Source: Orbicella franksi (taxonomy: Eukaryota). From it: a stretch of DNA of 64,000 bases. Under the pieces are notes generated by a model. The model was not told the DNA's origin, searched no databases, and was given only the letters and a program-made list of their open reading frames with translations. Below, in pieces: positions 26,725 to 64,000 of the stretch (position 1 is its first letter; the number at the start of each line of letters is the position of its first letter). A program made the translations under genes and the position numbers. Where the stretch lies: the NCBI GenBank assembly GCA_964199315.1, contig OZ116703.1, forward strand, positions 27,900,001 through 27,964,000, in the 5' to 3' direction.

Positions 26725-39625
<12,901 letters not shown>

Positions 39626-41735: not shown

Positions 41736-44700
41736 ATGAGCGCAAAAAAGCCGCCTCCCCGACCACCCTTACCGCGATCATCGACCGCGAGAAGTGGCCA
41801 GCCAACCGGAGTAGCTCCTGAGAAATCTCTCCGAAATCCATTTTCTTCCATCTCTATTCGCTACAGTTCAAGCAACAAGGAGTCAGATTCCGACGAAGAA
41901 ATTTCTATAGTACGTAAAGAAAATAGTAAGGTTCCCGATCCCAATGAACTACGTCAAGAAATCGGGGGAGAAGATGGAGAAGATGGTTTTTTTAATGTGA
42001 CGAAGCGAGTGTGTGAGCAAGTTGGAAGCGCGAACACTTCTCAACCGGAAAAATATAAATATGCTGAAGGAACTTCGAATACGAAACAGAACTCTTCTGG
42101 GACAGGCTTAAATCTTGCAAGCAAAAGTCATTCTACTCAGGAACTGAGGGAAACGCCAGACAGGCGATCGGCAGTTACAAAACAGAGCACTTGGCCGAGT
42201 TATTCGCGAAATGAAGACTCCGATTCGGTGATCATGAAGTTTCTGCGTGGTCGAGAAAGGGAGCGCGAGCAGGGGAACGAAGGGAAAGTTGACTCTTCAA
42301 AAGAAGGTCTTTCGCTTTCCGAGAAGGAGGAAAGCGATGCTGGTTCGCGTCCTTGCAAGAGCCATGCTGACGATGGTTCGGAGAGTAAGTTGAAAGCGCA
42401 CCATCAAAGGTCCAGGTCACCTTCACCATTTCGCATTTTGAATCGTGATCGCCAGGTTGAAAGTGCAGGTGATCAGGAGAAACCTAAATCCTCAGCTGGA
42501 ATTTCCTTATCATCTCTTTTAGCCAGCATAGCGAAAGACGAAGTACATGGTGAGACCGAAGAGAAAATTTCAGATACTGAGGAAATCGAAAGCAACGCGG
42601 ACATAGTTTCTGAAATCCCTTCTCCAGACTTGTTATTCAATTTTGACCACTATAATGAGGCAAGCAGAGAGTCGGGAGCGAGACTCTTATCACGCCCCAT
42701 TCTAGACAAATCGCCTCAGTTCGCAAATTTCTGCTTTTGCTCTTTGCTTGTGTACATCTACTTCATAACAAGTTCTCCGCCGTTCATCTCTGGTTTAGTC
42801 CTTGGAAGTTTGTTGGCGTATTTAGGAGGATGTGCGTTTCTGTGGCTGTTTTGTCCAGAGGATACTCTAGCGGAACGATATGAAAAAGAATTGTTGGAAT
42901 ACGAAGGGAGACTAGCGAGAACACCTAGGCCAGAGTACAAATATGTCGATCCAGGATTGCTTGTGAAAAGAAACGTGCTAGAGGCAAGTATACAACTTGT
43001 GAATTATAAAAAAAATGTTTTCGTGACATCAAATAATGAAAACAAAATTCTGTCATTTATCACCAGCCAAATGATTCTTGAAGTTTAGCAATCAATTAAA
43101 ATGTAACAATGTGACAACTTTCCAGTGATGCAGAGCATTTTAAAACATCGATTGCACAGTCACCCGTAGAGTCTGTGACAGACAGAAACGCTTTCATTCT
43201 TGAGTAGAATAACATTTGCTAATCTTCATGTTTTCAATTTTTAATGAGTCCCTTTATTGATTTTTATCAGCTAAGTTGAAATTTGGATTGGAGTGGATCC
43301 AATTACAATGGACAAGAAGCTTGATGAAACTCAAAAGCGGGCACTTAAAGTGTAACTTCTTTTTTGTTTTTTTAAAAATAGTCTGACTGCTCTTTTTCAA
43401 AAGAAATTGCATCATTCTCACAAATGACATTTGCATTGTAGGCCAGATGCTTCCTTGCATCTTGCGCATAACTAAAGCACATGTATTGCTTGTATGAAAA
43501 ATATTTAAGTTTCTCATTCATTTATTTTTTGTGTCAGCACTTTCTTACTGTCCAAGTCACCAGTATTTTGGCAAGGGGATAGTCTGCCTTGTTCCATTAT
43601 TTGGTTTGTCACACAACCATTCTCCCCACTAATGGCTGGATAAATCCAGGGTTCACCTGAAAATTTGAAGTAGAGGGAGAATAACTTTGAGTAAGCGGCA
43701 GACAATGCCGATAAAAAGATTTGGAGTGGTTTTATCGGAGCCATGTGGAAGGGGGGATGACAGCAACCTGTTATTGGGGGGTCCGGGAGCCTCCCCGGGA
43801 AAATTTTGAAATTGGGGTTCTAAAAAGTGCATTTCAGTGTATTTTAAGCAATCATGGTTTTGTTCTTTTGTTAAAGAAAAGCAATTTCACCGAGAGAAAA
43901 ACATAGATATGTATTGTGATAGTTGAACAGGTTAGTCATCGTCATCCGTATGAAATTTGAAAAAAATATCAAAAATGTTCTCATTTTGTGGTCAATCATG
44001 CATGTAAAAATGAGAAAAGAGTTTTGCTGGCATTGAAGGTACTAGATTGAGGTTTGACATTTATTTTGTTAAAAGACAAGTTTTGAATGGCTTTAAACAC
44101 AGTGCTAGGGGTGGAATTCATTGAACGTGATGAAGCTTGTGATTGGTAACCATTGCAAGTGCAAGCCTGTAATACTTGGTGAAGTTTCCTGCGGATTTAA
44201 GCTCAGAATTTTTTCTGATTAAGCGTGCGGACCATCATCACCGTTTTGAACCTTTGCGATAGTTTGGGTTTTTCGTTCATGATTTCAAAAGTGATAAAAT
44301 TAATACAATCAAACTTAAACTTTACATATTTTGCAAATGTTTCGCTTTATAATGAAGCCTTGAAATAGTGCATGTATTTATTCATACTTCCCTGCTCGAT
44401 AAGTTCGCCAGTTTTATATCTCACTTCCAATATTTACACAAACATCTTACAGCTGCTGAGTTTAAAGATTGTGTAAGATCTTGTAAAGTTTGTTTCTTTT
44501 GTTGAAAGAAATCTTTGTAGTTATTTGTTCTTGAAAATCCTCCATGTGCGAGCCAAGCACTGGGTTGCATGTCATTGTGTTTAAAGAACTAATTAAATTA
44601 CGCTTACATTCACTGGAGATAAAAGAACTAATTTTAATAATATTTTTGAAAGAAAACAACTTATGACCTTCGTTTGTGCCATCTCTATTTTCTTTTCAAT

Positions 44701-47700
44701 TTATCCCTGGTACTTAGTAGCAATTGTTGGGTTTTGCACTTCATGTTCAGAGGAAAAACTGAGCTTTAACTTAATCCCGGCTGTCAAATATTTCAGTGCT
44801 GCTGTCACAGCTCAGTGCCCACGTCACATTTTTGGTGGCAATTCTCATGGCCCAAATGATTTCAGATTTCTTTTATCTTACAGCTATAAGAGTTGCTATG
44901 TATTTGTTGAGAATATTAGACATATTGTTTTTATGCTTAATTTTATTGACGGATAGGCTCACATTGTTACAAATACAATTTTTTCATAATTTATTTACTA
45001 TAAGTAGCTGGCACGCCAAGGACGACTAGACAGCAAATTTCGCCGGTCACCGGAGCTTATGGAGAACTCTGTAAATCTAAGCCACATTCCACTCTCCACT
45101 TTGACACCCACCCGGGGTCCCTCCCTGAGACACCCATCAGCCAAAAATATGCAGTGAATGTTTACCAAAACACAGCTAGATTGCTACAATACTTAAACTC
45201 AGATACATGATGTACTTACGAAATTTTCCTAACTGTGGTCTTCAAATCAGATGTGTTTTATTTGGGTATTATTTTTTATTTTGATGTCAAATGTATGTCA
45301 AATTCAAAAGGTGACATCATTAGTATCTGTTGACATTTTCGACGTCAGGTTCACAATATGAAAAGACTTTTGAATAGTGTAATCGTCAAATCGTGGCACA
45401 ACAAGGTAATGAGATCTTTAAGCAACACTTGTTGTTTAAACAACCAAACCTGGGTATCAACAAATTGTTAGGATGAGTTGACAAAATGCTTGAAACTAAG
45501 CTGTAATGGACTAACATCAGTTGCTTCATGCTACAGATGAGAAGCCAGTGAAAACAAAAACAGTTATGGGCAACAAGGCTTGTGAATACTAACCTACTTA
45601 CACAGTGTTTCATAACCATTTAGTAAGATTTGCTCGAATCATCTTTAATGTTTTACTCTGCTTTTCTCTTCAGGGCTGGATGTTTAAGTCATTTGATTAT
45701 GTCGCAGACAAGTTTGACTTTAGCCACGAGACTGTTCCAATATATGCCTCAGTGAAGGGAACAAAATTAACTCTGTCATATCCCAATGTTGATAGTGCGG
45801 GCAAAAAGTTTGATCTCAGGTCAATTGATGAGGGTGCAAAGGTACTTTTTGCAAGACATGAACACTACGACATAGCTGGAAGTAAAGTTTCACTTTTACC
45901 TTCGACTATGACAATGAAGAAAGTGTGGAGTCGAAAGTTTCCGATCTGCCTTGTTCTTGAAAAGCCAAATGCAGTTACTGAAGACATCACTTACAAAACC
46001 AGAAGTACAGATGAAGAAGATGACGCAGACAACGTGTGCAAGGTCAAACAGCAGGATTCATTTGAAGATGTTGGTGTTCTTTACTTGTTTCCGAGGACTG
46101 GCAGAGAGAAAGAAGAATGGTTCAATCACCTGTGCAGACTTCTGAATGACAATTCTGAGAACACTTCTTCACAGGAAACCATCCAAACGTCTTGCTCATA
46201 TCCACATTACATGGCCAGACTTGTGCCTGAACCTAATGCTTCACAGCAGAGTGAAATTGCCTGGGTGAATGTTATATTTGGAAGAGCATTTTGGGATGTG
46301 TGGCAAGATAAGTACTGGACCAACAAAGTCAAGGAACGCTTTGAAAACAAACTTGCCAAGATGAAAAAGCCCTCTTTTATTCGGGATATCACTATTTCTG
46401 ATCTCAATCTTGGTCAAAGTCTCCCAGTTATAACAAAGACTTTTCCTCCTGTGGTTGACGAGCGGGGCACTTGGGTTGATTTGGAAGTGACCTATGGCGG
46501 TGGCTTGATTCTTACATTTGAGGGCCATTTGAACATTGAGGGCTATTTGAGCTACTTCCTAAGTCTTGGAAACAGTGAACATGGAGAAGTTTCCGCAGAA
46601 CTGGAAATGGCAGCATTGTCACGAAAATATGAAATGATTGACAATGAAAGTTTTGACCCAGAGGATCCAGAAAATGATTCTGAGTCAGAAAGTCCACCAG
46701 ATAGTGACTCAGACTTTGAATCGCCTGAGTCTGACCTTGAAGAATTCACAATTAAAGCTATTCATACACCTCTTAAAGTGCCAGATAAGCCTGATGATGG
46801 ACCGCAGAGTGAAAGCTCTGACTATTTCACATTGAGCAGCTTTGAGGGTGACGAGGACTTTCTAGAAAGCAAGGACACATTGCCTTCTGGCAATCTATCT
46901 GACTCAGAAGTAGGAAATGGCATTTTGGATAGGAACACCCAACTAAAAAGAAGGACACTGTCTTCTCAAAAGCAGAGCTCAGGAGAAGAAACATCTGATA
47001 AAAGCTTACCAACTGGCCCTAGTGACAAGACATCAGACAGTGCCCCTTGTACTCCAGCAAAAAAACATTTAGGTTTTTCAGCTAGACATGGAGCAAAGCG
47101 TAAGATCTTTAGTGTGATTGAACGGCTGGCCAAATCCAAGTGGGTAAAGAAGGCAGCTGAGACTGGCATAGTCAAACGGGCAGCTGAGAGGTTTTCTAAT
47201 ATTCCTATCATTTTGTCGGTGGAGGTTCAAAAAGTCCAAGGAACTCTTGCATTGAACATTCCTCCACCTCCTACAAACAGACTCTGGTAGGTGACTGTTA
47301 GTTGATCTATATTGAACAATCTCCAATCTGCAACATTCACTACCTTTCTTCTTGAGAGAATATATGGTCCTGATTTATTACTGTTTTTCTACCTGGTGAT
47401 CATTTATCTTTGTCGCTAACTTTTAAATAGTAATTTGTTATAAATTGTCATTGCCTGATTTCAAGCTGAAAAGGACTAGGTATGAGTCTGTAAATTATGG
47501 GATTAGCAACTATTGATCCACATAGTCAGAAAGAGCACACCAAGATCCACAAACTCTTCAAGTTTAGTGTTATCAGGCTAGTTTTGACTGAGATACAACC
47601 ATTTAAAAATGCAAAATTACACAAATATTTTGGTTATCATCTTTTATGAAAAACGCTATTGTATATCTTTGTTGTGCAGGTATGGTTTTCGAGGAACTCC

Positions 47701-52055: not shown

Positions 52056-55000
52056 ATGTAAGTAGATTCTTGTAAAATCCTCGGTCATCCTGCTATTACT
52101 AAACATTTCATATCTATCTCATACACCTTAAGATGTTTTAAAATTATTCTTTTCCCGTATTAGAATGGTTTTGCTTTAATTTCGTTCTAATTCCCGCTGT
52201 TTTTTCAGGGGTCGCAGAAGTCGCTCACGCTCGCGCTCTCCTGCACCTCGCAAAGACAAAGACAAAGAAAAGAAGCGAACTTCTAGTACCCGAGGCCGTA
52301 GTCCAGTTAAGTCAAGTAAAGCAAGTAAAGGAAAGAATAAAGCCAAAGGGGAGCAAGGCAAAGCAAGTGCAAAAAATGCTACAGAGAATTCGAAGGGAAG
52401 TCGACGCCGCAGCCGTTCATCCAGCAGGTGAAGTAAACCCTCGAGTGAACTTTCATTTCCTTCCTGCCATTTTCCTTGGTGTATGACATTTTACAGACTG
52501 CAGACCGCAGACGTTTTAACTGAAATCGTATTCCCATTTCCATTACCGAGAGCTAACCGTAAACAGGCTAACCTGAGTGATATTTAGGTGAACCAGGGCG
52601 CTATGTTGGCCTAAATGTAGTAACCAGGCGCATCGGCTGCAGTCTGCAAATGTCATACACGGCATTTTTAGACATCTTAAATCTAGAAATTTATTCTGTC
52701 TTTTAGATATTATGGCTAATTGAAATTATGGCTTAGAGTGTTGTTAACTCTCCAACGCGCTGGTCATGGCAAAGTTGAGGTTAAATTACGGGCAACATAC
52801 AGCCTTTCACTGTTTGTCTACAGCACGCGATTCAACAAACTCTACACCTGCAGAGACGTAGATGTTTGCTGAATGAGTGTAACCACAGCCATTATACTGC
52901 AGTGGAGATTAGTTTACTCCCCTTTAAACATAATTAAAGCTGCAAATATAAGAAACTCCCAAATAATGCCCAGCTTGTATGAATTTGTTTTATGAGTTTT
53001 ATCATCGGTCAAAATGGTGTTGAAAATTGAAATATTTTAAAACATAGCCTGTATACCTTTAGCTTAATGTCTTCTTGTTTATTCTGGCTGGTTTAAACAG
53101 AATATATTTTTTTTCCCTATCAGAGGTATCATCCACTATAAAATAATTTAAGGCTGGCTAAAAGGATGGGTTCCTTTGGGGTGAACCAGTTCTGGTCAGT
53201 GATCCAAGATCACTCTGATCATGGTGCATCAAAAGGAACCAATGAGTCCACTCTGGTCACAGATTCATCTGACAGTTCCTTTGATGCACCATAAACCGAG
53301 TGATCTTGAATCCTGATCCAAAGGAACGCACCCTGAAATCATATACATGTAATACATGAACTATGAACTTCTGCACAGCTACAGTGTATTGCTTGTTCAC
53401 ACTTATATCATTCTTTTGTTATGTTTCTGGTGTAGTTCATCGTCAAGCTCTGGCAGCTCGTCAAGTTCTGGCAGTCGCAGCTCCAGTTCAGGATCCAGCA
53501 GTAGTAGAAGCAGCAGTTCAGGATCAAGCAGTGGCTCAAGTCGGAGCAGTAGTAGGTCAAGTAGCATTAGTAGTGGTGAGGATGTCTTATTTTTTTTTAA
53601 ATTTTTAATATTGTTATAAAATTTTTAGCTGTAATTATTTACTATATTTTTTAAATTTATTTATTTATGTTTATTTTGACCAGGGTCTCTTTTGGTAATA
53701 GGTTTTTTGCTTTCAAAAGGGCCACATTGAAATGAATTGNNNNNNNNNNNNNNNNNNNNNNNNNNNNNNNNNNNNNNNNNNNNNNNNNNNNNNNNNNNNN
53801 NNNNNNNNNNNNNNNNNNNNNNNNNNNNNNNNNNNNNNNNNNNNNNNNNNNNNNNNNNNNNNNNNNNNNNNNNNNNNNNNNNNNNNNNNNNNNNNNTAGT
53901 TTCTGAAATTCTTGAACCTGGAATTTTTTCCCTCATTTTTCGGGACTCTGGATTTGTCCAGACTTCAAATACCTTACTTTTTTCCTCTTGCCTGTTCCAT
54001 CATGACTATCACTTAACTGCCTCATTGCCTCAGCAACATTCAATTTCCTCTTGAATTGATACAAATTGCCTTGACTTTCTCGTATTCGGCAAAAGCCACA
54101 GTGCTTTCCAGTCCTTGTAACTGTAGAACAAAAACTTTCCAGATTGCATTTAAAGGGAATCTTTGCTGAAAAGCAGTTCAAGTTCCACAGTATACCTGAT
54201 GGTTCTCATTAATTGATCCTGGTGTTTTAAGTTGATATCTCTGTAAGTGGTTTGATGTCATAGTTTCCCATCAAGCTTGGCAAAAACAAACACGGTGGCA
54301 CATGGGAAATATTTGAAATCCTAAAATAACTGGAAGGAAATGGCCAGCATTCAAAACAGTCAAAGAACTATTGATTTTGAATCACTGAAACAATTTAACA
54401 CCAACACCAGCTTGTGATTTGGAACAAAACGATCCCTTTCACAACTATCAATGAGGTGACACGCCGCAAATCGGGTAAAGGTGCAATTAATGAACTTGAG
54501 CTCAATGGAACGAGAATAACAAATTCAACCAAAATTGCAGAGGGTTTTAATAAATTTTTCGCAGAAATCGGTCCCGAACTGTCCAGGGATATAGAAGAAG
54601 TCGGCACCTCTTTCGATGAATATATTTACCAAACCAGCAATTGTTTTAGTTTCCAGCGAGTGACTCAATCGCACGTTTTGTCCCACCTAAATAAATTATG
54701 CAAGAGAAAGGCTACAGGTCTCGATTCTGTGTCAGCAAGACTTCTAAAAGAATGTCCGGATTTAATCTCCTGGTCACTCGCTCTGATATTCAATCAATCG
54801 ATCGATACTGGTATTTTTCCTGATGAATGGAAAAATGCAAGAATCACGCCTCTTTTTAAGAAAGCAGGAAGTAGGAGTGATCCTTCTAAGTATCGACCGA
54901 TCTCGATTATCCCGGTTGTGGCCAAGGTTTTCGAGCGAATTATTTATGATCAGTTGTATCATTACCTAAATGAAAATAATCTTCTCAGTAGACACCAATC

Positions 55001-57274
55001 CAGTTTTCGCTCGCTTCATTCTACAGTTACTGCATTGATTGAAGCGACTGATAATTGGTCTTTAAACATCAATCGTGGCTTTATTAATGCCGTTATATTT
55101 TAGATCTTAAGAAGGCTTTCGTTACTGTGGATCACTCTATTCTTCTCTCAAAATTACAAGCTTATGGTATTCAGGGTTCCACAAACCAATGGTTCTGCTC
55201 TTATTTAAAAAACCGAACCCAGACGTGTCTTGTAAACGGGAATAAATCGTCCAAAACGTTCCTTCGCTGTGGTGTTCCACAGGGAACGATTCTTGGGCCC
55301 CTTTTATTTCTATTGTATATAAATGATTTGCCTAATTGCCTCCAGCATTCCCAACCAAGGATGTACGCCGATGACACTAGTATTACATTTGCTGGTAGTG
55401 ACGTTGATGAAATAAATAGTTGTATTAATCTTGATTTGGAGAGAATTCATGTGTGGCTTGCAGCCAACAAAGTAACTTTAAATATGACAAAGACAGAATT
55501 CCTTCTGATTGGTTCCAAGCGAAGGCTTTCAAATTTTACAGTGAATCCTACTGCTAATATCGACCAGTTTCCGATAAAACGAGTCTCGACTGTTAAATCC
55601 TTAGGTGTACACATTGATGAAAATCTTACTTGGGAGTGTCATATCAATGAGCTTTCCAAAAAGATTGCTTCTGGCATTAGCGCCATTAAACGTATTAGGT
55701 ATTCGGTCCCATATAAGACTTTACTTTCCGTTTACAATTCATTAGTCCAACCTCATCTCGATTACTGCAGTTCGGTGTGGGGATCCTGTTCTAAAACTCT
55801 TTCTCAAAAGTTACAAAAATTACAAAATCGGGTAGCACGCGTCATAACTTTTTCAAATTACGATCGTAATACTGATGAATTGTTGAGGATGGTCAACTGG
55901 GTTAAACTGGACCGTCAACGCCTTGTTAATAAATTAATAATGATGTACAAGATTGTAAATAATATGGTTCCGGAATATCTTTGTTCACGCTTTGTCTTCC
56001 GTTCCGATACTTTGACTTATAAGCTAAGAGATAGTGATGGTACGCTTGCTATCCCACAGCCCCACACTAATTACTGTAAAAGAAGTCTTTCTTACAGCGG
56101 AGTTGTACTATGGAATAGTCTGCCCTTGAATATTAGACAATCGCTCTCCCTTAATCAATTTAAATCTAAGTTGAAGAACTATGATTTTGACAGTGGTCTT
56201 ATATAAATTTTATTTTGTTTTTATACACGGCTTCCTTGTAAAGCAGGTTTTTATCATTTCTCTTATTCTAGTAGTTATTTACAATATTAAATTAGTTAGG
56301 TAGTTAGATTTATTTAAATTAAATATTGTATAGTCCTGAAGGAAATACCGTGTCTAAATAAAGATTTTACCTTTACCTTACAACCAGACTCACCTTTGGT
56401 TCAAAATGCGTTCAAAAAATTATTTTTCTTTTCTTTTCTCCCTTCAGGTGGTGAAAAAGACAAGACAGCCAAGGCTAAGAAAGAAGTGAAAGAAAAAGAG
56501 ACAAAAGAAGTGAAAGAAGTCACAAAGGAACCCAAAGAAATCAAGGATAAAGCTCCTCCCCCTCCCCCTAAAATCAAGTCGCCTAAAGTGTCTCCTCCCC
56601 CAAAGTCACCCAAGAAATCTCCAGTCACCAAGTCACCCACTCCGCCTCCTCGTGCCAGGCCCACGCGACGATCAGTTTCGAAATCCGTGTCGAAGTCACC
56701 CAGCCCCGTGAAACGTGCACCTCGTGCGCGTTCGTCGTCCTCGTCAGGCTCCTCGCGCTCGCCAAGGAGACGTAAAAGAAGTCCAACTCCCAAACCCACT
56801 AAGCTGTACGTGGCGCATCTCACACGCAACGTCACTAAGGATCATGTGTTCGAGATATTTAGCGTGTACGGTCACGTGAAGTCAGTAGACTTGCCTATGG
56901 ACCGGTTTAATTTTCTTCCTCGGGGATTTGCGTACGTGGAGTATGACGAGGCTGAGGATGCGGAAAGCGCTTTGAAGCACATGGACGGAGGACAGATTGA
57001 TGGACAGGAGATCACAACTCAGATGGTACACCCCATGAGGCCTCGCGACGTTAGACCTGCTCGCCGTCCCAGTCCACCTCCCCCACGGCGCCGTCCTCCG
57101 CCGCCAGCGTGGAGAAGATCCCCGCCCGCCAGATTCCGTGGTCCTTTCAGGGCGGGAAGACGATCGCGTTCACCATCACCACGACGCCGTTCTCGTTCGA
57201 AATCACGAAGTAGAAGTCGATCTCCGCCGAGACGACGAAGATACAGCCGATCAAGTTCGAGCTCCTCTCGATAA
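52056..57274 (+). CDS. RNPS1: RNPS1 (EJC/ASAP-associated SR-related RRM protein); coding exons 52056-52057 (AT), 52209-52427, 53436-53575, 56448-57274 (~395 aa)
   Basis: Ser-rich domain followed by RRKRSPTPKPTKLYVAHLTRNVTKDHVFEIFSVYG...ALKHMDGGQIDGQEIT...WRRSPP...RSSSSSSR*, the RNPS1 architecture. Exon phases are consistent. Confidence 0.92.
53165..53335. mobile_element. Diverged copy of the 1508-1692 hairpin MITE
   Basis: ttcctttggggtga...gatccaagatcactc...ccaaaggaacgcaccct. Confidence 0.75.
53740..53895. other. Assembly gap (156 N) in RNPS1 intron 3
   Basis: Run of n characters. Confidence 1.
54410..56382 (+). mobile_element. 5'-truncated, frameshifted non-LTR retrotransposon (L2/CR1-group RT) in RNPS1 intron 3
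   Basis: RT motifs YRPISIIPVVAKVFERII; AVIF-DLKKAF broken by a 1-nt deletion near 55100; GVPQGTILGPLLFLLYINDL; YADDT. 3' UTR ends in AATAAA plus a (TTTACC)n tail. No endonuclease domain. Confidence 0.92.
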
Positions 57275-58044
57275 GCTTGCACTTGGTTCCAGTGAACTTT
57301 GTGCGTAAGGAAAGAAAGCTCTGTTCAAGGACAACATAATCGAAAAATAACTGCGTGTTTGCAGTCTGATAGTCATATTAGCTCAAGTTGCATCGGTGAA
57401 AGAAGAGAACATTTCAGTGAAGGAAACAGTTTTCGATTCAAAAGTCCTAAAACGACAGTTTCTTTCCGTTAGTCTGGTACAATTTTGGAAACAAAGACAA
57501 ACAGAACGTTTCACTAACAGAAATTTACTGGGACACTTGAAGAGGTTATATTCATGTGAAAATGAGTCAAACTTACAGATCTGTTTCAAGATTGTATGGC
57601 TTTATTACTTTTAAATTGTTTGATAGATGCTTCATCATTTTTACTTCAAGAGACAGTTGCTAAGTTTGTACATTCTTGCTTTTGAATTAAAAGCAGTTTG
57701 TACTTTTTATTACCTGGCTGTGATGCTTCGCTTTTTGTTGCCTTTTTTTTTGTTGTTATTGGTACGTTTTTTCCCTTTTTTTTTCTTATTATTTTAATTT
57801 ATGTAGTTTTTGTTTTGTTTTTTTGCCAGTACTGGTTTTCTGTTATTATTTCTGTGGGTTAAACTTCAACAGTCTTCCTGTTGATTTGCTTTAAAATTCC
57901 ACTGATAAGAGACAAAAACTGAAATGCGGGCCTCTATGAAGATCTGGTTTATGCTTTGAGTGCGTCTATCGAAGGCTGTTCGTGTGAGTAAAGAAAGTAC
58001 TTTAGAAGCTGGAACTGTGCTTTAGGTGAAGGAAACATCCATAA

Positions 58045-58445
58045 AGCCCTGGCGAAACGGACTCGCAAGAAGTCGCAAGTAGCCGCAAGTTGAATTTGCG
58101 TAGAGACTTGCGTTGGGTGGCCAAACGGACTCTCAAGATTCCTCGCTAGTTAGCCTACGTCTAGCCGTAGTAGGCCACGCGCTAGTACACGCAAGTCGCA
58201 AAAAAAAAGAACACATTTCAAGGCAGACATATCCTGTATTTCATTGGCTAATACCGTGTAATGGATTAATGGGTGGCCAAACGGTGAAAAACTTGCGTCG
58301 ACTTGGGTGAAAATTTGATCTTGACCAAAGTGAGCGCAAGTCATTGCAAGTCAACGCAAATGCACGCCAGGTCTGGCCAAACGAAGTCGCACGTGGACAT
58401 AAGTTTTCAACTTGCGTCTATTTGCTTGTCCGTTTGGCCAGGGCT
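58045..58445. mobile_element. PIF/Harbinger-like MITE with TAA TSD
   Basis: TAA|AGCCCTGGCGAAACGGAC ... GTCCGTTTGGCCAGGGCT|TAA. Confidence 0.85.
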
Positions 58446-59236
58446 TAACTCGACAGACTCCACCAAAAGTATGAAACAATTCTTTTGCATCATCGCGGCA
58501 GGGATCGGGGAAAGCTTTGGTTAATGGTTAGAAGACTCGGCGATTATTTGTTGCATTGGAGTGAATTATTGAGGTGTGTCGACCGAGTTAGGGATGATCG
58601 CTCACGCTGCCGGGTCATAATGAGTATATAACGCGAATTTATTGATAATTACAATTACCGCCAAGCCCCGCTCATAAGATATAAAATTCTTTGTATTTTC
58701 AGCCCTTTTCGGTCGCAGAAGAAAATTAAAAGGAATTTATGAAAGGCAAATATTGAGAAAACTATATCCAAAAAAAGTTATTTATGGATGGACTCACCTG
58801 AAACATTTTATTTCAGGTGAGTCCATCGTAGTTTTCGTATTTCTTTTGGGCTGAGTTGTTCAAATGGTCGATAAAACTATTTGCATGTTCACCGGCCAAA
58901 TCACTATGAAGTATTCTTGTCTCCCAATTTTTAGCCCTTGAATAATAAGTTATTCAGCAGAATGCGTTATCCATCCATTGAACAACTACTAGCAGCTATT
59001 AGTTTCACTCAGAGTGATCTAAGTCTATTTTCTTTCTTACACCTGGGTATCGATTCATTACGAGGTATACAGATTCTAGAAATTGCTATGTTAATTTTTG
59101 TTGGAAAAACTTGTAGACTGATGTTGCTCGCCAAAATGGCCAGAGCGGTCAGCGGTTTAAATGAAACTAGAGTGGAACCTGGGAAGAAGATACCAGGACG
59201 CGAAGACGCCTGGCAAAGTTTGACTTTACGTTGATC

Positions 59237-62200
59237 ATGTCGCTGAAGACAGTTACTGTGTTTTGTGGTTCTAGCTCAGGAAATGATCCGAGGTTTGAGG
59301 AAAGCGCTAGAGGTGAAGTTGTTTCGAGTAACTTAATGTAACTTTACTATATATTTCTGAGATTTTTTATGGGATGTCGTCGTAGTCTTGCAGTCCTGAA
59401 ACTCCATGTGAAACTAGAATTTGTTCAGATTTGTTGAACTACCGAACAACATATTAGGCTGGCTGAAGTTGTAGTGTTGAAAACCCACTAACCTAGACAC
59501 AATCTTTGAAACATTTACCTTCCCAACCACAAGAAATTGAAACAAAGTAGAGCATATAGGTTTTCTCTCGCCGTCTATCAACGAAAGATGAACAGAATAC
59601 ACAAGCAGTCTGTAATGTGCTTGAGTTCAAAATACCCGGCAACTGGCCGCCTACATAAGCTTACATGCAACGTTTACGAACAACGTTTTTTTACTCTCGA
59701 ATATACAGAGTTCAATGTTGCATTTCTGCTAATTTCTTAGGGCTACCGAAGTTGCAAATTAAAAACTAATAAAAAAATTAGGGCCCACAAATTTATGCAT
59801 TATTGTAGGACAAAATTAATCTTTTGACTACAGAATGTGCTACAAAAGGTGTTTAAAAAAATACAATTGAAAAGAAAACAGAAAGAATCATATTTTCTTC
59901 CTAAGAAAGATGCAATTGGGAACAACAGAAAATACTGCCCACTGTGCAAGGGCAGATTTAGGAGGGGGGTACTCGCAGTATACATGACGGGGAGGGGGGG
60001 AGTCCAACATATTTTTGGGGTTGAAAATTGACACCCTCAATATTTTTGGGGGTCAAGAGATCTGTCATGTATTTTATTAGGTCTTAAAAAATGCGTAGTT
60101 TTTGGGTATACACATCTCCGAGTGAAATTTTTGTTGCAATCAGACAAGAGAGGATAAAGAGACATTAACAGATCTACCAGTTTCGTTAGATCATGCATTA
60201 GAAGAGTCTGTTTGATTGAATAAATCAGTATTGAGGTATTTAATTCTTGCATTTTTTTGGTTAAGATAGTTTGATGCTGGGTATTTTTGGGGGGGTGTAA
60301 AATTTCAGGCTCATATTTCTTAGGTTTGCAATATGAAGGTCTGTCAGGCCCACCATCATGTATACTGTGAGTACCTCCTGGGGGGTGGATTGGTTAGCTA
60401 GCCACTGTCTTTTAGAGAAGCAGAAAAAAATGAAAACAATTGTGAATATTTTAGCAGAAATGAAGGCAAACACTCTGGGCAGGCACCTCATTGTAATTTC
60501 TAGTTTGTGGTATTGCTAGTTTTTTTGGTGTAACAGTTTTCAGTTCGGTTCCAAATCTCAAGTTACACTGTTTTGGGAGGATGCCACATTGAGTCTGTAA
60601 CCCCAAAGTACCAGTCACCCACCCCCCTTGAAAAATCCTGGATCCACTCTTGACTGTCTAACAAAAATATACGAAAAGGTTGCTAAGTAATATTAAAAGA
60701 ATCAGCCGAAAATTAGACAACAATAATTGTTGTTTTTTCAATATTAGCCATTGGTAGAGTTAAATCTTTTAAAGCTCAAAATGTATTCAAAGACAAGCTG
60801 TTTTGTTCTAAACAACACACTTGTTCATATTGTGTTGGTTTTTAAGATAGTTTAACATCATTTGCAGCTCTTGGTCAGTGCCTGGTGAAAAACAAGATTA
60901 ACCTGATATATGGTGGAGGATCAGTTGGACTCATGGGAACTGTAGCTAAGACTGTAGCTGATGGTGGTTGTGATGTTACTGGATTTCTCCCTGAGTTCTT
61001 TGTTACGAGAAGTAAGCCAAGCAAAAATGATAGTTTCAACCGATAAAATTCAGCCTTAAGCTTTAAAAAGTAAATGTCTTGACTAATAATTTGAGAATTT
61101 GTTACTACTGACTATATTATGTATATAAATAGACTGTGAAATGCAAAACGAGATCTTTTTTAGTTGATTCTTTTTTTCTACTTGACAATGTGTCTACAAA
61201 GTTGATTACCGTAACGATATTATACATGTATATTTATTACATCTACATTTATATACATACATGTAGTAATTCAGGAGGTATTAAATAACAATAATAAGTT
61301 GATCAATAATAATAAGTCTTTACAAGCCTAGTCACAGGACCACAACTTCCACACGTTAAGAACAAATAACTCTTACTACTTGTTTCTGAAGAGTAAAAAT
61401 TTTATTTACCTTTTGTGCTATATTCAATAACTGAGTTTAAAATATAGCTTTGTTGTTGTTGTTGTTGTTGTAGTTGTTAAAACTCAAATAAGTCTTTAAA
61501 GTATAATGTCTGATGTTGCCAAAACCATGATAATTCCAGAGCTATCCTAGCTAGCCTGCATAGCAAGCATTCCTATACAAGTGAGGGGTTTGTTGCCTGC
61601 TGTGATGTAAAAATTGAATGCAGGAAAAGTTCTTAGGTTTGTATGAGAACTTTTACTAGTCCACTGAAATCTGAACTGAACTAGTGGGAGCACTTTATAT
61701 GCAGGCTAGAGCTAGCTTAAACAAGCCAACATGAGCATTATTCAGGCTTTGAACCTGAGCATTACTTAGACTAACCAGAGTACTATTGAGATGACCAGAG
61801 AGCTCAAGGCCGATTACTAATCGTGCTATTTAGGGTAATGGAAGCACTATTATATTCATGCTAACTAGAATGCGATTAATTTTGTTCTTTAAAGTGACTC
61901 ATTCACTCATGACTTAATTATTTGACTCAAAATTCCAAAAATAATGGAAGCCTTTCTATAACTTGGATGCTAGATAAAAATTTAGTCTCAAAAAATAAAA
62001 ATAATAAATATCGGGTAGTTTAGATAAGGTTATAGAAAATCGTTTTTTGTAACTTGTTTTACTCTTTTAGATCCTGAACACTTGAAGGGCATTGGTAGGA
62101 CAGTGCTGGTTGAAGATATGCATACTAGAAAAAGAAATATGCTAGAACAGGTAACATCAAGGCTATTGATGTATAGTGGCTATTGCTACTGAGAAGAATT

Positions 62201-63848
62201 TTATTAATTTATCAATCTATCCTCTTTCCATCAATTTTGTATGTGAACATCTCTGTTCATAAGTACTTATAGGTAATATGTTGACTGCACAAACCCAAAA
62301 AGTAATTTATACATCTCATTGGGTTTTTTAATAACGTAAACACTAGTGAATAAACTATACCTTTTTACTCAAAATTTTTGTAACAAATTGGGGATGAGGC
62401 TTTTCTGCCTTTAAGTTGCATAAATTAACACTTTTCATCAAAAATTATAAGTCTGTATAGCATTTACTAATAAGAACTTCATAACACTATACCAGAGTAC
62501 ACAAAAATCATTGCTTAAATTGCAAGTTTGATAGCTTATGCGGGTTTATGTTCAACAAAATTAATGTAAGCTTCTATACATGTAGAGCATCTTTCTTAAG
62601 ACTCCACTTTTGATTTATTTTGGTATCTCTCCAAAAACATTTTTTCCAAAATTTGAGCTCCAAACTTAGGGGTTCGGCTTATGTACCAGTGCAGCTTATC
62701 CACTGGTGTTCACAGTACCATATTTTGCTTACTTTTCAACTTTTTACTCACCTCTGTAGGATTTGGAAACATACAGCAACTCATAAAATATCTGCACATG
62801 TGAAGAAGCTAGTCATAAAAAGGGATAAGTGACGATTTTGGTTGTTGTTTTTTTTTTTGCTCCAAATTAGCTGAAATTTTGCATGTGGACTTCATTTCAG
62901 CTGAAAGTATTGCCCTGTATTTTTTTTTTCGCTGGGTTGCTCTTCGTTTTCGAGAAATAACATATGCAAAAAAAGGCACTTTTCCTAGCGGCATCTTTTT
63001 GTCGAACGCGAAACAAAAGAAACCTTTTGTTTTGCTGGACAATGAAATCAACGAAGCGTCACATTAGCCGCTCGTTGTTCGTGCCGATACAAGTATCCCA
63101 TTCATAAGAAAATGCTTACTTATTCATATTGTCGTGTTAGTACAGGCGATTAAAGCGCTACATGGATCGAGAGCAGGTACATTTGTAGTGAGTCGAGTTC
63201 GACACGACGCCGGCCCCTCTTTTTTTTTCTTTTTTTTTTTTGTTTGTTTGTTTGTTGTTTTTTTTTTTTGTTGATTTCTCCTCTTCTTTTTGAAACCAAA
63301 ACATTAAAATAGCCCGTTCAGTCGACGCTGCTAGTGCTAAAATAAACCGTTCGAGTTCACATCGAAATACACCTTCGATTAATAACATTCGGTGTGTATC
63401 GAAAGATTCACCCATTTATCGATGCCACCATCTGTAGGATTTGGAAACATACAGCAACTCACAGAATATCTGCACATGGTTGTGTTGTCAGTGGTAAAAT
63501 ATTTATTTTGGGTTTATAATTTTTCAAGCCAGTTTGATTTCTAGTTCCCTTTGTTTCAAATTATATGATGACTATCACAAGCCATTGAAAAATAAAAGTC
63601 AACCTGGTTTGAAACAAAGATAAATCTAAATGTTACCACAACATATTTTATAATAATTTTATTTAATGTCTCTTACTAAAATGTTTGGTAGAAATTTGTC
63701 AGATTAATAGTATTTTTTGATAAATTTATTGTTGTATAATGAAACTATTGAATACAATTAAAATTTAACTTCATTTCTAGGCTGATGCACTGATAGCTTT
63801 GCCAGGAGGTTATGGTACCATTGAAGAACTTCTTGAAATGATCACATG
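59237..63848 (+). CDS. LOG: LOG (LONELY GUY)-family nucleotide/cytokinin-riboside-5'-monophosphate phosphoribohydrolase, 3'-incomplete; exons 59237-59312, 60868-61011, 62071-62150, 63781-63848
   Basis: Spliced product MSLKTVTVFCGSSSGNDPRFEESARALGQCLVKNKINLIYGGGSVGLMGTVAKTVADGGCDVTGFLPEFFVTRNPEHLKGIGRTVLVEDMHTRKRNMLEQADALIALPGGYGTIEELLEMITW. It carries the VFCGSS, YGGGxxGLMG, DMHxRK and PGGxGTxEE signatures. All introns are GT-AG and in phase. Confidence 0.93.
59947..60652. mobile_element. Nested MITEs in LOG intron 1 (inner ~59961-60385 within an outer CAGGGGCGGATCCAGG-type element)
   Basis: Inner TIR gggtactcgcagtatacatga / tcatgtatactgtgagtacc; outer ends caagggcagatttagg / cctggatccactcttg. 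Confidence 0.6.
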
Positions 63849-63885
63849 GTGAGAATATACATGTACCCCGGTATGATATTCAACT

Positions 63886-63975
63886 GCCGCCTGGTTAGCT
63901 CAGTTGGTAGAACACCAGACTGCTGTATGGGAGGTCGAGGGTTCAAGCCCCAGACCGGACCAACACTTAGGGTCT
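63886..63975 (+). mobile_element. tRNA-derived SINE head in LOG intron 4
   Basis: gttagctcagttggtagaaca (A-box) ... gggttcaagccc (B-box) followed by non-tRNA sequence; the anticodon arm does not form a clean cloverleaf. Confidence 0.65.
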
Positions 63976-64000
63976 ACCTTTGTGCTACCTTGGTAAATAC

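What the first reader, a model, noticed from the sequence alone, without database searches (positions are those of the whole stretch)
59237..63848. Intron-containing, catalytically intact LOG (cytokinin-activating-type) enzyme gene embedded in an animal chromosome
Seen: four exons, none long enough to appear in the ORF track, splice into a LOG-family protein. It keeps the catalytic Arg (DMHTRK), the PGGYGTIEE motif with the catalytic Glu, and the YGGGSVGLMG loop. It lies next to RNPS1, and its introns carry MITEs and a tRNA-derived SINE like the rest of the window, which argues against a bacterial or algal contaminant. Established: LOG proteins cleave ribose-5'-phosphate from (cytokinin) nucleotides in one step, are typical of plants, bacteria and fungi, and to my knowledge are absent from human, fly and worm. 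Inference: this is an ancient retained gene or a domesticated horizontal transfer. In a probable coral it could free isopentenyladenine from tRNA turnover as a host-made signal to algal symbionts or microbes, or it could be a purine/AMP salvage enzyme. The remaining exons are outside the window.
Basis: partly seen in the sequence, partly recalled or inferred. Interest (0 to 1): 0.88.

Follow-up and report, generated by a model that had tools for sequence, protein, structure and literature searches.

The report
Coral LOG-family nucleotide hydrolase gene
The window holds the first four exons of a real, intact coral gene for a LOG-type enzyme (the kind that frees cytokinin bases in plants), but it is an old animal gene already annotated in other corals, sea anemones and Trichoplax, and it is not tied to algal symbiosis.

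Summary
Four GT-AG exons (59237-59312, 60868-61011, 62071-62150, 63781-63848, + strand) splice into 122 residues colinear with positions 1-118 of TIGR00730/LOG. The catalytic Arg (DMHTRK), the PGGYGTIEE motif and the GGGSVGLMG loop are all intact.

The spliced product is 98.4% identical, without gaps, to the RefSeq protein 'probable cytokinin riboside 5'-monophosphate phosphoribohydrolase LOG4 [Orbicella faveolata]' (190 aa, 6 exons). Exons 5-6 lie beyond the window.

It is a host gene. The locus is colinear with O. faveolata at about 96% DNA identity, RNPS1 included. RNPS1 also sits next to LOG in Nematostella.

All five intron positions and phases are shared by Orbicella, both Nematostella paralogues and Trichoplax adhaerens. 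The gene therefore predates the cnidarian-placozoan split. That favours 'ancient retained gene' over recent horizontal transfer and rules out contamination.

Its deep origin (eukaryotic or alphaproteobacterial) stays unresolved.

The five residues proposed to bind the prenyl group in cytokinin-type LOGs are conserved, so N6-isopentenyl-AMP is a plausible substrate. This is untested.

Non-symbiotic species keep the gene, which argues against a symbiosis-specific origin.

Novelty is low: orthologues are already named in databases, although no functional study was found.

The parts
59237..59312 (+). Exon 1 (76 nt). It starts at an ATG, encodes the N-terminal strand with the FCGSS phosphate-binding serine, and ends with 1 nt of a split codon.
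   Evidence: GT donor. (TIGR00730 positions 1-21). Identical in sequence to O. faveolata exon 1. All orthologues start here.
59313..60867 (+). Intron 1 (phase 1). It contains a weak 49-nt inverted repeat at 59965-60013 / 60330-60378.
   Evidence: 93.7% identical to O. faveolata intron 1. Same position and phase in Nematostella and Trichoplax.
60868..61011 (+). Exon 2 (144 nt). It encodes the GGGSVGLMG nucleotide-binding loop and the FLPEFF segment.
   Evidence: Three synonymous differences from O. faveolata.
61012..62070 (+). Intron 2 (phase 1).
   Evidence: 92.5-93.5% identity to O. faveolata. It holds a sub-threshold H/ACA-like hit at 61610-61726.
62071..62150 (+). Exon 3 (80 nt). It encodes DMHTRK, which carries the catalytic Arg and the Met, His and Lys of the proposed adenine/prenyl pocket.
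   Evidence: Residue roles are taken from CgLOG in PMC4979012. Two non-synonymous differences from O. faveolata, P/S and R/K.
62151..63780 (+). Intron 3 (phase 0). It carries a 623-nt lineage-specific insertion (62803-63425) flanked by 48-nt direct repeats.
   Evidence: repeat family D11; the insertion is absent from O. faveolata.
63781..63848 (+). Exon 4 (68 nt). It encodes PGGYGTIEELLEMIT plus the first 2 nt (TG) of the Trp codon, so it carries the catalytic Glu and the pocket Glu.
   Evidence: (PF03641 E 4e-8). Identical to O. faveolata exon 4.
63849..64000 (+). Start of intron 4 (phase 2), with a tRNA-like stretch at about 63885-63960. Exons 5 and 6 (about 68 codons) lie beyond the window end.
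   Evidence: GT donor. The O. faveolata model has exons 5-6 of 76 and 126 nt. The tRNA-like A-box occurs once and is not called as a tRNA.
56396..57274 (+). Upstream neighbour RNPS1 (an RRM with Ser/Arg-rich flanks). It serves as the host-genome anchor.
   Evidence: RRM_1; PDB 4a8x RNPS1, E 2.6e-30. It is also adjacent to LOG in O. faveolata and Nematostella.

Best explanation
This is the 5' two-thirds of an ordinary, functional nuclear gene of the coral. It encodes a type-I (short, about 190 aa, dimer-type) LOG-family phosphoribohydrolase.

Shown:
- The gene structure.
- Intact catalytic and nucleotide-binding motifs.
- Near-identity to an annotated Orbicella gene.
- Conserved linkage to RNPS1.
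- Five intron positions shared with sea anemones and with the placozoan Trichoplax.

The gene was therefore already in the genome of an early animal, before the cnidarian-placozoan split, and was inherited vertically. It was not found in other animals in my searches, which could not cover them exhaustively.

Inferred mechanism, from the family's known chemistry. The Arg of DMHTRK and the second Glu of PGGYGTIEE cleave the N-glycosidic bond of a purine nucleoside 5'-monophosphate in one step. This releases the free base and ribose 5-phosphate. All five residues proposed to line the N6-prenyl pocket of cytokinin-type LOGs (Met, His, Lys, Glu, Trp) are kept. N6-isopentenyl-AMP from turnover of i6A-modified tRNA is therefore a likely substrate. 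AMP and damaged or odd purine nucleotides are likely secondary substrates, as in the Dictyostelium, fungal and mycobacterial enzymes.

The most probable cellular role is nucleotide salvage and clearance. Free isopentenyladenine would be a by-product that may or may not be used as a signal.
For: Structure and motifs.

Identity to annotated genes:
- 98.4% gapless identity to RefSeq O. faveolata LOG4-like P0151.
- P0151 passes TIGR00730 (175 bits against a cut-off of 96.35) and PF03641 (130.5 against 27).
- P0151 aligns over 184 residues to solved Arabidopsis LOG3 at E 2e-51.
- Its AlphaFold model (pLDDT 75.7) matches AtLOG8, AtLOG3 and type-I LOGs at TM 0.80-0.88.

Host gene:
- Window 56144-64000 is colinear with the O. 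faveolata scaffold at 95-97% identity, RNPS1 included.
- An RNPS1 RRM (77% identical) lies beside LOG in Nematostella.

Purifying selection: exons are 98.6% identical to O. faveolata against 92.5-95.4% for introns. The five exon differences are 3 synonymous and 2 non-synonymous.

Ancient vertical inheritance:
- Exon lengths are 76/144/80/68/76 in Orbicella and both Nematostella paralogues, and 67/138/80/68/76 in Trichoplax.
- All five introns sit at the same aligned codons and phases 1,1,0,2,0.
- The tree constrained to Cnidaria + Trichoplax is 7.6 lnL better than the free tree, p-AU 0.70.

Expression and splicing in relatives: intron-free Logan contigs carry the complete ORFs of the Acropora millepora protein (L003, L004) and of a pocilloporid-like orthologue (L002). 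A P. acuta 'LOG3' gene is up-regulated in oral epidermis (PMC13581030).

Expression in this species group (indirect): poly(A) RNA runs hold 0.33-0.64 of the sampled words of exon 2 plus 100 nt on each side. An exon-only signal would give 0.36. DNA-like runs hold 0.75-0.89.

Pocket residues: CgLOG Met96, His97, Lys100, Glu125 and Trp129, with catalytic Arg99 and Glu122 (PMC4979012), map onto DMHTRK and PGGYGTIEELLEMITW.
Against: - No reads could be laid on this locus. Splicing in this very species is therefore inferred, not seen.
- Exons 5-6 are outside the window. A disabling change there cannot be excluded for this genome.
- No enzyme assay exists for any animal LOG, so substrate preference is inference from five pocket residues.
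- The narrow NCBIfam equivalog 'CtkRMPhLog' (NF058542) is not reached: 108.5 bits against a cut-off of 300.
- Trichoplax has a diverged pocket (NFYERK). Pocket conservation is therefore not universal in animals.
- Protein trees are poorly resolved at depth. In the free careful trees the cnidarian clade sits near Hyphomicrobiales-like alphaproteobacteria, not with plants and chytrids.
Confidence: 0.85

Rival explanations
1. Ancient horizontal transfer. An early animal, before the cnidarian-placozoan split, took the gene from an alphaproteobacterium of the Hyphomicrobiales type. The gene then gained its five introns. It is 'animal' only by adoption.
For: - In careful trees the cnidarian clade groups with Methylobacterium, Salinarimonas and Rhodobiaceae sequences (99/96*, 94/97), not with plants, chytrids and Amoebozoa.
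- No bilaterian, sponge or ctenophore orthologue appeared among the best 120 hits of three searches.
- The Salinarimonas protein lies in a true bacterial gene context.
- No intron position coincides exactly with one in a plant LOG.
Against: - The AU test does not reject all eukaryotes as one clade (p 0.21).
- With more sampling, fungi (Yarrowia, Rhizopus) fall into the same unresolved cluster as the animals.
- By similarity, the best non-animal hits to the coral protein are plants and chytrids at 50-54%, against 44-49% for bacteria.
- The direction of any transfer between eukaryotes and alphaproteobacteria is unknown, because the trees are unrooted.
Confidence: 0.12
2. The gene's main role in corals is to make free cytokinin (isopentenyladenine) as a host signal to dinoflagellate symbionts or the microbiome.
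For: - The classical prenyl-pocket residues are conserved in all twelve hexacoral sequences aligned.
- The gene is expressed in a tissue-specific way in P. acuta.
- Animals make i6A-tRNA, a source of iPRMP (general knowledge; PMC7076654).
Against: - The gene, with the same structure, is kept in Nematostella (as two tandem copies), Actinia tenebrosa, Desmophyllum pertusum and Trichoplax. That these do not host algal symbionts is my own knowledge, not tested here.
- In P. acuta it is higher in oral epidermis, which is not, to my knowledge, the symbiont-bearing tissue.
- Full-text searches found no report of cytokinin signalling between coral and symbiont.
Confidence: 0.08
3. It is not a working host gene: either contaminating plant, algal or bacterial DNA in the assembly, or a decaying pseudogene.
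For: The family is typical of plants, fungi and bacteria. Only four exons are visible, and no reads were laid.
Against: - The flanks are colinear with an independent O. faveolata assembly, and RNPS1 is linked in two genera.
- The introns are animal-specific and shared with Trichoplax.
- There are no stop codons, and exons are more conserved than introns.
- Spliced cDNA contigs exist in related corals.
Confidence: 0.02

Closest known systems
RefSeq 'probable cytokinin riboside 5'-monophosphate phosphoribohydrolase LOG4' of Orbicella faveolata (P0151; scaffold MZGG01000218.1)
   Same: 120 of 122 residues are identical, without gaps. The first four exon lengths (76/144/80/68) are the same, and RNPS1 is the upstream neighbour in both.
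   Different: Two substitutions (P/S and R/K in exon 3). Introns differ by about 5-7%. The window has a 623-nt insertion in intron 3. The window therefore comes from a related coral, not from that assembly.
Trichoplax adhaerens TRIADDRAFT_61856 (XP_002117840.1) and the two tandem Nematostella vectensis LOG genes
   Same: Six exons, with all five introns at the same aligned codon and phase. All are TIGR00730 members above the cut-off.
   Different: 58-59% identity to the Orbicella protein P0151 for Nematostella. Trichoplax is on a long branch with a changed pocket: NFYERK in place of DMHTRK, and the Trp shifted. RNPS1 is adjacent in Nematostella but not in Trichoplax.
Plant LONELY GUY enzymes (Arabidopsis LOG3 At2g37210, LOG8 At5g11950; rice LOG)
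   Same: About 50% identity over the whole length. Same fold, same catalytic Arg and Glu, same PGGxGTxxE motif, and the same five proposed prenyl-pocket residues.
   Different: Intron positions differ. One Citrus LOG8 intron lies 2 nt from a coral intron and none coincides. Plant LOGs refuse AMP (PMC11228631); whether the coral enzyme does is unknown. In my trees the plants form their own well-supported clade, and no coral sequence falls inside it.
Broad-specificity LOGs of non-plants: Dictyostelium DdLog, Claviceps CpLOG, Mycobacterium Rv1205, yeast LOG1/YJL055W
   Same: Short type-I LOGs found in organisms without plant-type cytokinin signalling. They act on iPRMP and also on AMP (PMC11228631). 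This is the most likely model for the coral enzyme's behaviour.
   Different: No animal enzyme has been assayed. Sequence relationship to these is no closer than to plants.
PpnN / type-II LOGs (hexameric, N-terminally extended nucleotide nucleosidases)
   Same: Same superfamily and the same chemistry (N-glycosidic cleavage of nucleoside monophosphates).
   Different: Much weaker matches: TMt 0.34-0.35 for PpnN and 22-26% identity for type-II LOGs. The coral protein has no N-terminal extension.

Membership tests
LOG / TIGR00730 / Pfam PF03641 family | PGGxGTxxE nucleotide-binding and catalytic motif | tested here: met
   PGGYGTIEE is encoded in exon 4, 63781-63848. PF03641 matches it at E 4e-8.
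LOG / TIGR00730 / Pfam PF03641 family | Catalytic Arg (CgLOG Arg99) and catalytic Glu (Glu122) | tested here: met
   The Arg is in DMHTRK (exon 3). The second Glu of PGGYGTIEE is in exon 4. Residue roles come from PMC4979012.
LOG / TIGR00730 / Pfam PF03641 family | Gly-rich GGGxxGxMG loop after the first strand-helix unit | tested here: met
   YGGGSVGLMG in exon 2. It aligns to AtLOG8 and AtLOG3.
LOG / TIGR00730 / Pfam PF03641 family | Whole-protein profile score above the curated cut-off | tested here: inconclusive
   The window's four pieces match colinearly, but each is below the cut-off on its own. The 98.4%-identical full-length orthologue passes: TIGR00730 175 against 96.35, PF03641 130.5 against 27. 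The C-terminal third of this genome's copy is outside the window.
LOG / TIGR00730 / Pfam PF03641 family | Rossmann-like alpha/beta LOG fold | tested here: met
   The AlphaFold2 model of orthologue P0151 matches AtLOG8, AtLOG3, PaLOG and CgLOG at TM 0.80-0.88. This was tested on the orthologue, not on the window's partial protein.
LOG / TIGR00730 / Pfam PF03641 family | Phosphoribohydrolase activity (base + ribose 5-phosphate from a nucleoside 5'-monophosphate) | not testable with these tools
   Needs a recombinant enzyme assay.
Cytokinin-type ('classical') LOG | Proposed N6-prenyl pocket residues Met, His, Lys, Glu and Trp (CgLOG 96, 97, 100, 125, 129), identical in AtLOG3, OsLOG and CpLOG | tested here: met
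   Met, His and Lys are in DMHTRK. The Glu is in EELLEM. The Trp codon is split across the exon 4/5 junction: TG is in the window and the full Trp is in Orbicella. The pocket itself is a structural proposal, not a proven determinant.
   Plant LOGs refuse AMP, while Dictyostelium, Claviceps and M. tuberculosis enzymes accept it (PMC11228631). No data exist for animals.
NCBIfam NF058542 'CtkRMPhLog' equivalog | Score of at least 300 bits | tested here: not met
   108.5 bits for Orbicella, 107 for Nematostella and 132.6 for Trichoplax. It is a narrow model from NCBI's library for naming bacterial and archaeal proteins, so failing it does not bear on family membership.
Type-I (dimeric, short) versus type-II (hexameric, extended) LOG | About 180-200 aa without an N-terminal extension, and closest to type-I structures | tested here: met
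   The protein is 190 aa and the LOG homology starts at residue 4. The best structural matches are type-I. Type-II matches are weaker, at 22-26% identity. The oligomeric state itself was not tested.

The most novel reading that the evidence does not exclude
Non-bilaterian animals (hexacorals, sea anemones, placozoans) have kept an ancestral one-step route from tRNA-derived N6-isopentenyl-AMP to free isopentenyladenine, a route not found here in any bilaterian. In reef corals this host-made cytokinin would be used as a chemical signal, either to dinoflagellate symbionts and associated microbes or within the animal's own epithelia. The hexacoral enzymes keep the full classical prenyl pocket, which fits this reading.
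Probability: 0.12. Interest if true: 0.7.

Novelty: already known. Interest (0 to 1): 0.3.

Why it matters
As a gene call it adds nothing. The orthologue is named in RefSeq and UniProt for at least nine cnidarian genera and for Trichoplax, and a 2026 coral paper lists one as a differentially expressed gene.

What this check adds is modest. The animal LOG genes share one six-exon structure across Cnidaria and Placozoa. They are therefore one old animal gene and neither contamination nor a recent transfer. The hexacoral copies also keep every residue proposed to hold the prenyl group.

My full-text searches found no paper that studies an animal LOG. Reports of cytokinins in insects and mammals lack a known activating enzyme. 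Nematostella is genetically tractable and has two copies, so it would be a cheap place to ask whether any animal makes cytokinin bases on purpose. That question is open but not pressing.

Tried and rejected
- Read laying. No junction reads were obtained, and I did not resend.
- Protein atlas. Exon 2 alone, and then P0151, returned only bacterial or plant LOG clusters and gave no help on animal distribution.
- Exhaustive representative search with exon 2. It mostly returned short exon-sized ORF fragments from coral contigs. It was useful only for P0016 and, later, for Trichoplax P0083.
- Plant intron comparison. Citrus LOG8 shares no intron position with the coral gene; one lies 2 nt away. This gives no support for a plant donor and none for introns inherited from the last eukaryotic common ancestor.
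- Bacterial donor hunt in species-representative genomes. It found only 32-49% identical proteins from many phyla and no close donor.
- Deep phylogeny. Three careful trees and one FastTree disagree on the sister group of the animal clade. I report the origin as unresolved and do not pick one.
- Microsynteny beyond RNPS1. The lipid-transfer-like ORF at 45605-47290 and ORF 41736-43088 gave no match in the Nematostella locus.
- Literature. Nine searches found no study of an animal LOG.
- Earlier findings of this scan. Nothing relevant turned up.
- snoRNA idea for intron 2. The SNORA69 match scores 29 bits against a cut-off of 47, and the fold z-score is -1.7. This is not convincing.

Full report
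THE OBSERVATION

Reading the sequence and splicing it in a script gives four exons on the + strand: 59237-59312, 60868-61011, 62071-62150 and 63781-63848. Each intron begins with GT and ends with AG. The introns fall at phases 1, 1, 0 and 2. The joined frame of 122 codons has no stop.

The four in-frame pieces match the TIGR00730 profile in order, at positions 1-21, 24-65, 77-95 and 97-118 of 178. They also match Pfam PF03641 and PF18306. Exon 2 alone finds the solved Arabidopsis LOG8 and LOG3 structures at E 4e-10 and 3e-9.

WHOSE GENE IT IS

Sequencing-run labels say coral.

To find full-length relatives I aligned the four exon pieces to a full-length hit and searched with that alignment. 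The spliced product is 98.4% identical over all 122 residues, without a gap, to P0151. P0151 is the RefSeq protein 'probable cytokinin riboside 5'-monophosphate phosphoribohydrolase LOG4 [Orbicella faveolata]', 190 aa.

The O. faveolata scaffold (L001) is colinear with window 56144-64000 at 95-97% DNA identity. That stretch includes the upstream gene. The upstream gene is RNPS1 by its RRM: PDB 4a8x at E 2.6e-30, Pfam RRM_1.

The Orbicella model has six exons of 76/144/80/68/76/126 nt. The window therefore holds exons 1-4, and the last 68 codons lie past its end.

Exons are 98.6% identical between the two corals: five differences, three synonymous and two conservative replacements. Introns are 92.5-95.4% identical. 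That is the pattern of a gene under purifying selection.

The window is not the O. faveolata assembly itself. Its introns differ by about 5-7%, and intron 3 carries a 623-nt insertion that Orbicella lacks.

HOW OLD IT IS

Three homologue searches and cluster look-ups give annotated orthologues in:
- Oculina, Desmophyllum, Acropora, Montipora and Stylophora;
- Actinia;
- Nematostella, with two tandem copies;
- Trichoplax adhaerens (XP_002117840.1), first picked up by the exon-2 representative search, placed next to the cnidarians in a large FastTree and identified by cluster look-up.

I mapped the gene models exactly onto their genomic loci. Orbicella and both Nematostella genes have exons of 76/144/80/68/76 nt before the last one. 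Trichoplax has 67/138/80/68/76. In the protein alignment all five introns fall in the same codon with the same phase (1, 1, 0, 2, 0) in all of them.

Five out of five shared introns between two animal phyla is hard to get by chance or by independent intron gain. A gene with this structure therefore existed before cnidarians and placozoans separated.

Linkage to RNPS1 is also kept in Nematostella, where an RRM 77% identical to the window's lies about 1.2 kb from the second LOG copy on the opposite strand. It is not kept in Trichoplax.

A Citrus LOG8 gene shares none of the intron positions; one lies 2 nt away.

WHERE IT CAME FROM BEFORE THAT

This is not resolved.

By similarity, the best non-animal hits to the coral protein are land plants and chytrids (50-54%). 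Bacteria reach 44-49%.

In careful maximum-likelihood trees:
- The cnidarians are one clade (92/89).
- Plants are a separate, well-supported clade (starred in all three trees), and no coral sequence falls inside it. This rules out a plant donor.
- The cnidarian clade sits near a small group of Hyphomicrobiales-like alphaproteobacteria, not with plants, chytrids and Amoebozoa.
- With Yarrowia, Rhizopus and Trichoplax added, all of these fall into one unresolved cluster.

An AU test does not reject all eukaryotes as one clade (p 0.21). The tree that holds Cnidaria and Trichoplax together is 7.6 log-likelihood units better than the one the free search found (p-AU 0.70).

So the animal genes are one lineage. 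Whether that lineage descends from the eukaryotic ancestor or from a very old bacterial transfer cannot be told from about 200 columns.

One eukaryote-looking mRNA contig from a JGI sample (P0016, L053: an ORF followed by about 790 nt without an ORF) groups with the cnidarians on a long branch. Its source organism is unknown.

No bilaterian, sponge, ctenophore, octocoral or medusozoan orthologue appeared in the best 120 hits of any search. Those lists are capped and word-seeded, so this is absence of evidence only.

IS IT EXPRESSED AND SPLICED

I therefore have no junction reads for this species.

Indirect evidence from relatives:
- Intron-free assembled contigs from public runs carry the full ORFs of the Acropora millepora protein (L003, L004) and of an orthologue 87% identical to the window's product (L002).

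Indirect evidence from this species group comes from a 344-nt probe made of exon 2 with 100 nt of intron on each side:
- Fourteen RNA or probably-RNA runs hold 0.33-0.64 of the sampled words. The six poly(A) or cDNA libraries among them hold 0.36-0.44.
- An exon-only signal would give 0.36.
- DNA-like runs hold 0.75-0.89.
- This fits spliced transcripts but does not prove them, because I cannot see which words are held.

WHAT IT MOST LIKELY DOES

The full-length orthologue passes the curated cut-offs of TIGR00730 and PF03641. It aligns end to end with Arabidopsis LOG3 at E 2e-51. It folds (pLDDT 75.7) into a model whose best structural matches are AtLOG8, AtLOG3 and the type-I LOGs of Pseudomonas and Corynebacterium, at TM 0.80-0.88.

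In the Corynebacterium enzyme (PMC4979012):
- Arg99 and Glu122 are the catalytic pair.
- The PGGxGTxxE residues hold the phosphate.
- Met96, His97, Lys100, Glu125 and Trp129 are proposed to hold the N6-prenyl group. These five are identical in the cytokinin-specific plant and Claviceps enzymes.

Mapped onto the window, these are the M, H, R and K of DMHTRK and the E, E, E and W of PGGYGTIEELLEMITW. All are conserved, with the Trp codon split by intron 4. They are invariant in the twelve hexacoral sequences aligned. Trichoplax has changed several of them.

My reading is a type-I LOG phosphoribohydrolase. It would cleave N6-isopentenyl-AMP, which any animal produces when it degrades i6A-modified tRNA. 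It would probably also cleave AMP, as the Dictyostelium, Claviceps and mycobacterial enzymes do (PMC11228631). The chemistry is inferred from the family. The substrate is inferred from five residues. Neither has been measured in an animal.

THE SYMBIOSIS IDEA

The gene is kept, with the same structure, in Nematostella, Actinia tenebrosa, the cold-water coral Desmophyllum pertusum and Trichoplax. By my own knowledge none of these hosts algal symbionts. It therefore did not arise for symbiosis.

The one expression datum places it in oral epidermis, not, to my knowledge, the symbiont-bearing tissue.

A co-opted signalling role in reef corals is not excluded, but nothing here points to it. Full-text searches found no report of it.

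NOVELTY AND VERDICT

'Ancient retained gene' is the better of its two origins.

The claim of surprise does not hold at the level of the gene. Orthologues have carried this name in public annotation for years; the Nematostella and Trichoplax entries come from those species' first genome assemblies.

Two things are not in the literature I could search. One is any study of an animal LOG. The other is the shared six-exon structure across two phyla shown here. I rate the finding as already known as a feature, with modest residual interest as an unstudied enzyme in early-branching animals.

Noticed in passing
window 62803-63425, with flanking repeats at 62753-62800 and 63431-63478: Intron 3 holds a 623-nt insertion flanked by 48-nt direct repeats (96% identical). 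O. faveolata has a single copy of the repeat and no insert. This looks like a lineage-specific insertion with an unusually long target-site duplication. The insert is T-rich and GTTT-rich on the + strand.
   Followed up: partly
window 61610-61726 (+), intron 2: A sub-threshold match to the H/ACA snoRNA family SNORA69: 29.3 bits against a gathering score of 47, with a 3' ACA. The fold z-score is only -1.7. It is possibly an intronic snoRNA, more likely chance.
   Followed up: partly
ARAGORN and Rfam do not call it, and its 21-nt A-box occurs once in the window. It may be a SINE head, cut by the window end.
   Followed up: partly
L005 (Nematostella DS469540.1) 10001-30531 and 31202-34863: Two tandem LOG paralogues on the same strand with identical exon structure. 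The annotated first gene has a 14-kb first intron.
   Followed up: partly
L001 (O. faveolata MZGG01000218.1) 12369-14091 and 17662-19384: The window's intron 2 to intron 4 region matches two places in the Orbicella scaffold equally well (about 95%). This is a 1.7-kb duplication, or an assembly artefact, inside the gene. It stretches the annotated intron 4 to about 6 kb.
   Followed up: no
L001 22265-30318: The gene downstream of LOG in O. faveolata carries the Pur_DNA_glyco domain (methylpurine-DNA glycosylase type). So two purine N-glycosidases sit side by side. This is probably coincidence.
   Followed up: no
L003 (Logan contig SRR26351933_18316) 380-997 and 1022-1618: In one Acropora contig an HMG-box ORF ends 25 nt before the LOG ORF on the same strand. 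A second contig (L004) has a poly-A run in place of the HMG part, and the two agree only from the last 8 nt of the HMG ORF onward. This is most likely an assembly chimera and not a bicistronic RNA.
   Followed up: partly
L053 (JGI 3300018935, Ga0193466_1034822): A 1444-nt contig with a 195-aa LOG ORF followed by about 790 nt without an ORF, which looks like a eukaryotic mRNA. It groups with the cnidarian clade on a long branch and has a degenerate Gly loop (YGSGQDGLMG). Its source organism is unknown; it could be another marine animal lineage with this gene.
   Followed up: partly
L056 (Trichoplax DS985268.1) 8001-10618: The placozoan orthologue keeps the catalytic Arg and Glu but has NFYERK for DMHTRK and a shifted Trp. 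Its proposed prenyl pocket therefore differs from that of hexacorals.
   Followed up: partly
window 54414-56206 (+) and 53.66-53.94 kb: Two adjacent ORFs of 229 and 359 aa that read like the reverse-transcriptase part of a LINE-type element (judged from the translation, not tested) lie just upstream of RNPS1. A run of N lies at about 53.7-53.9 kb.
   Followed up: no
window 45605-47290 (+) and 41736-43088 (+): Two long ORFs (561 and 450 aa) lie upstream. By eye the first looks like a lipid-transfer (SMP/PDZD8-TEX2-type) domain. Neither matched the Nematostella LOG locus by tblastn.
   Followed up: partly
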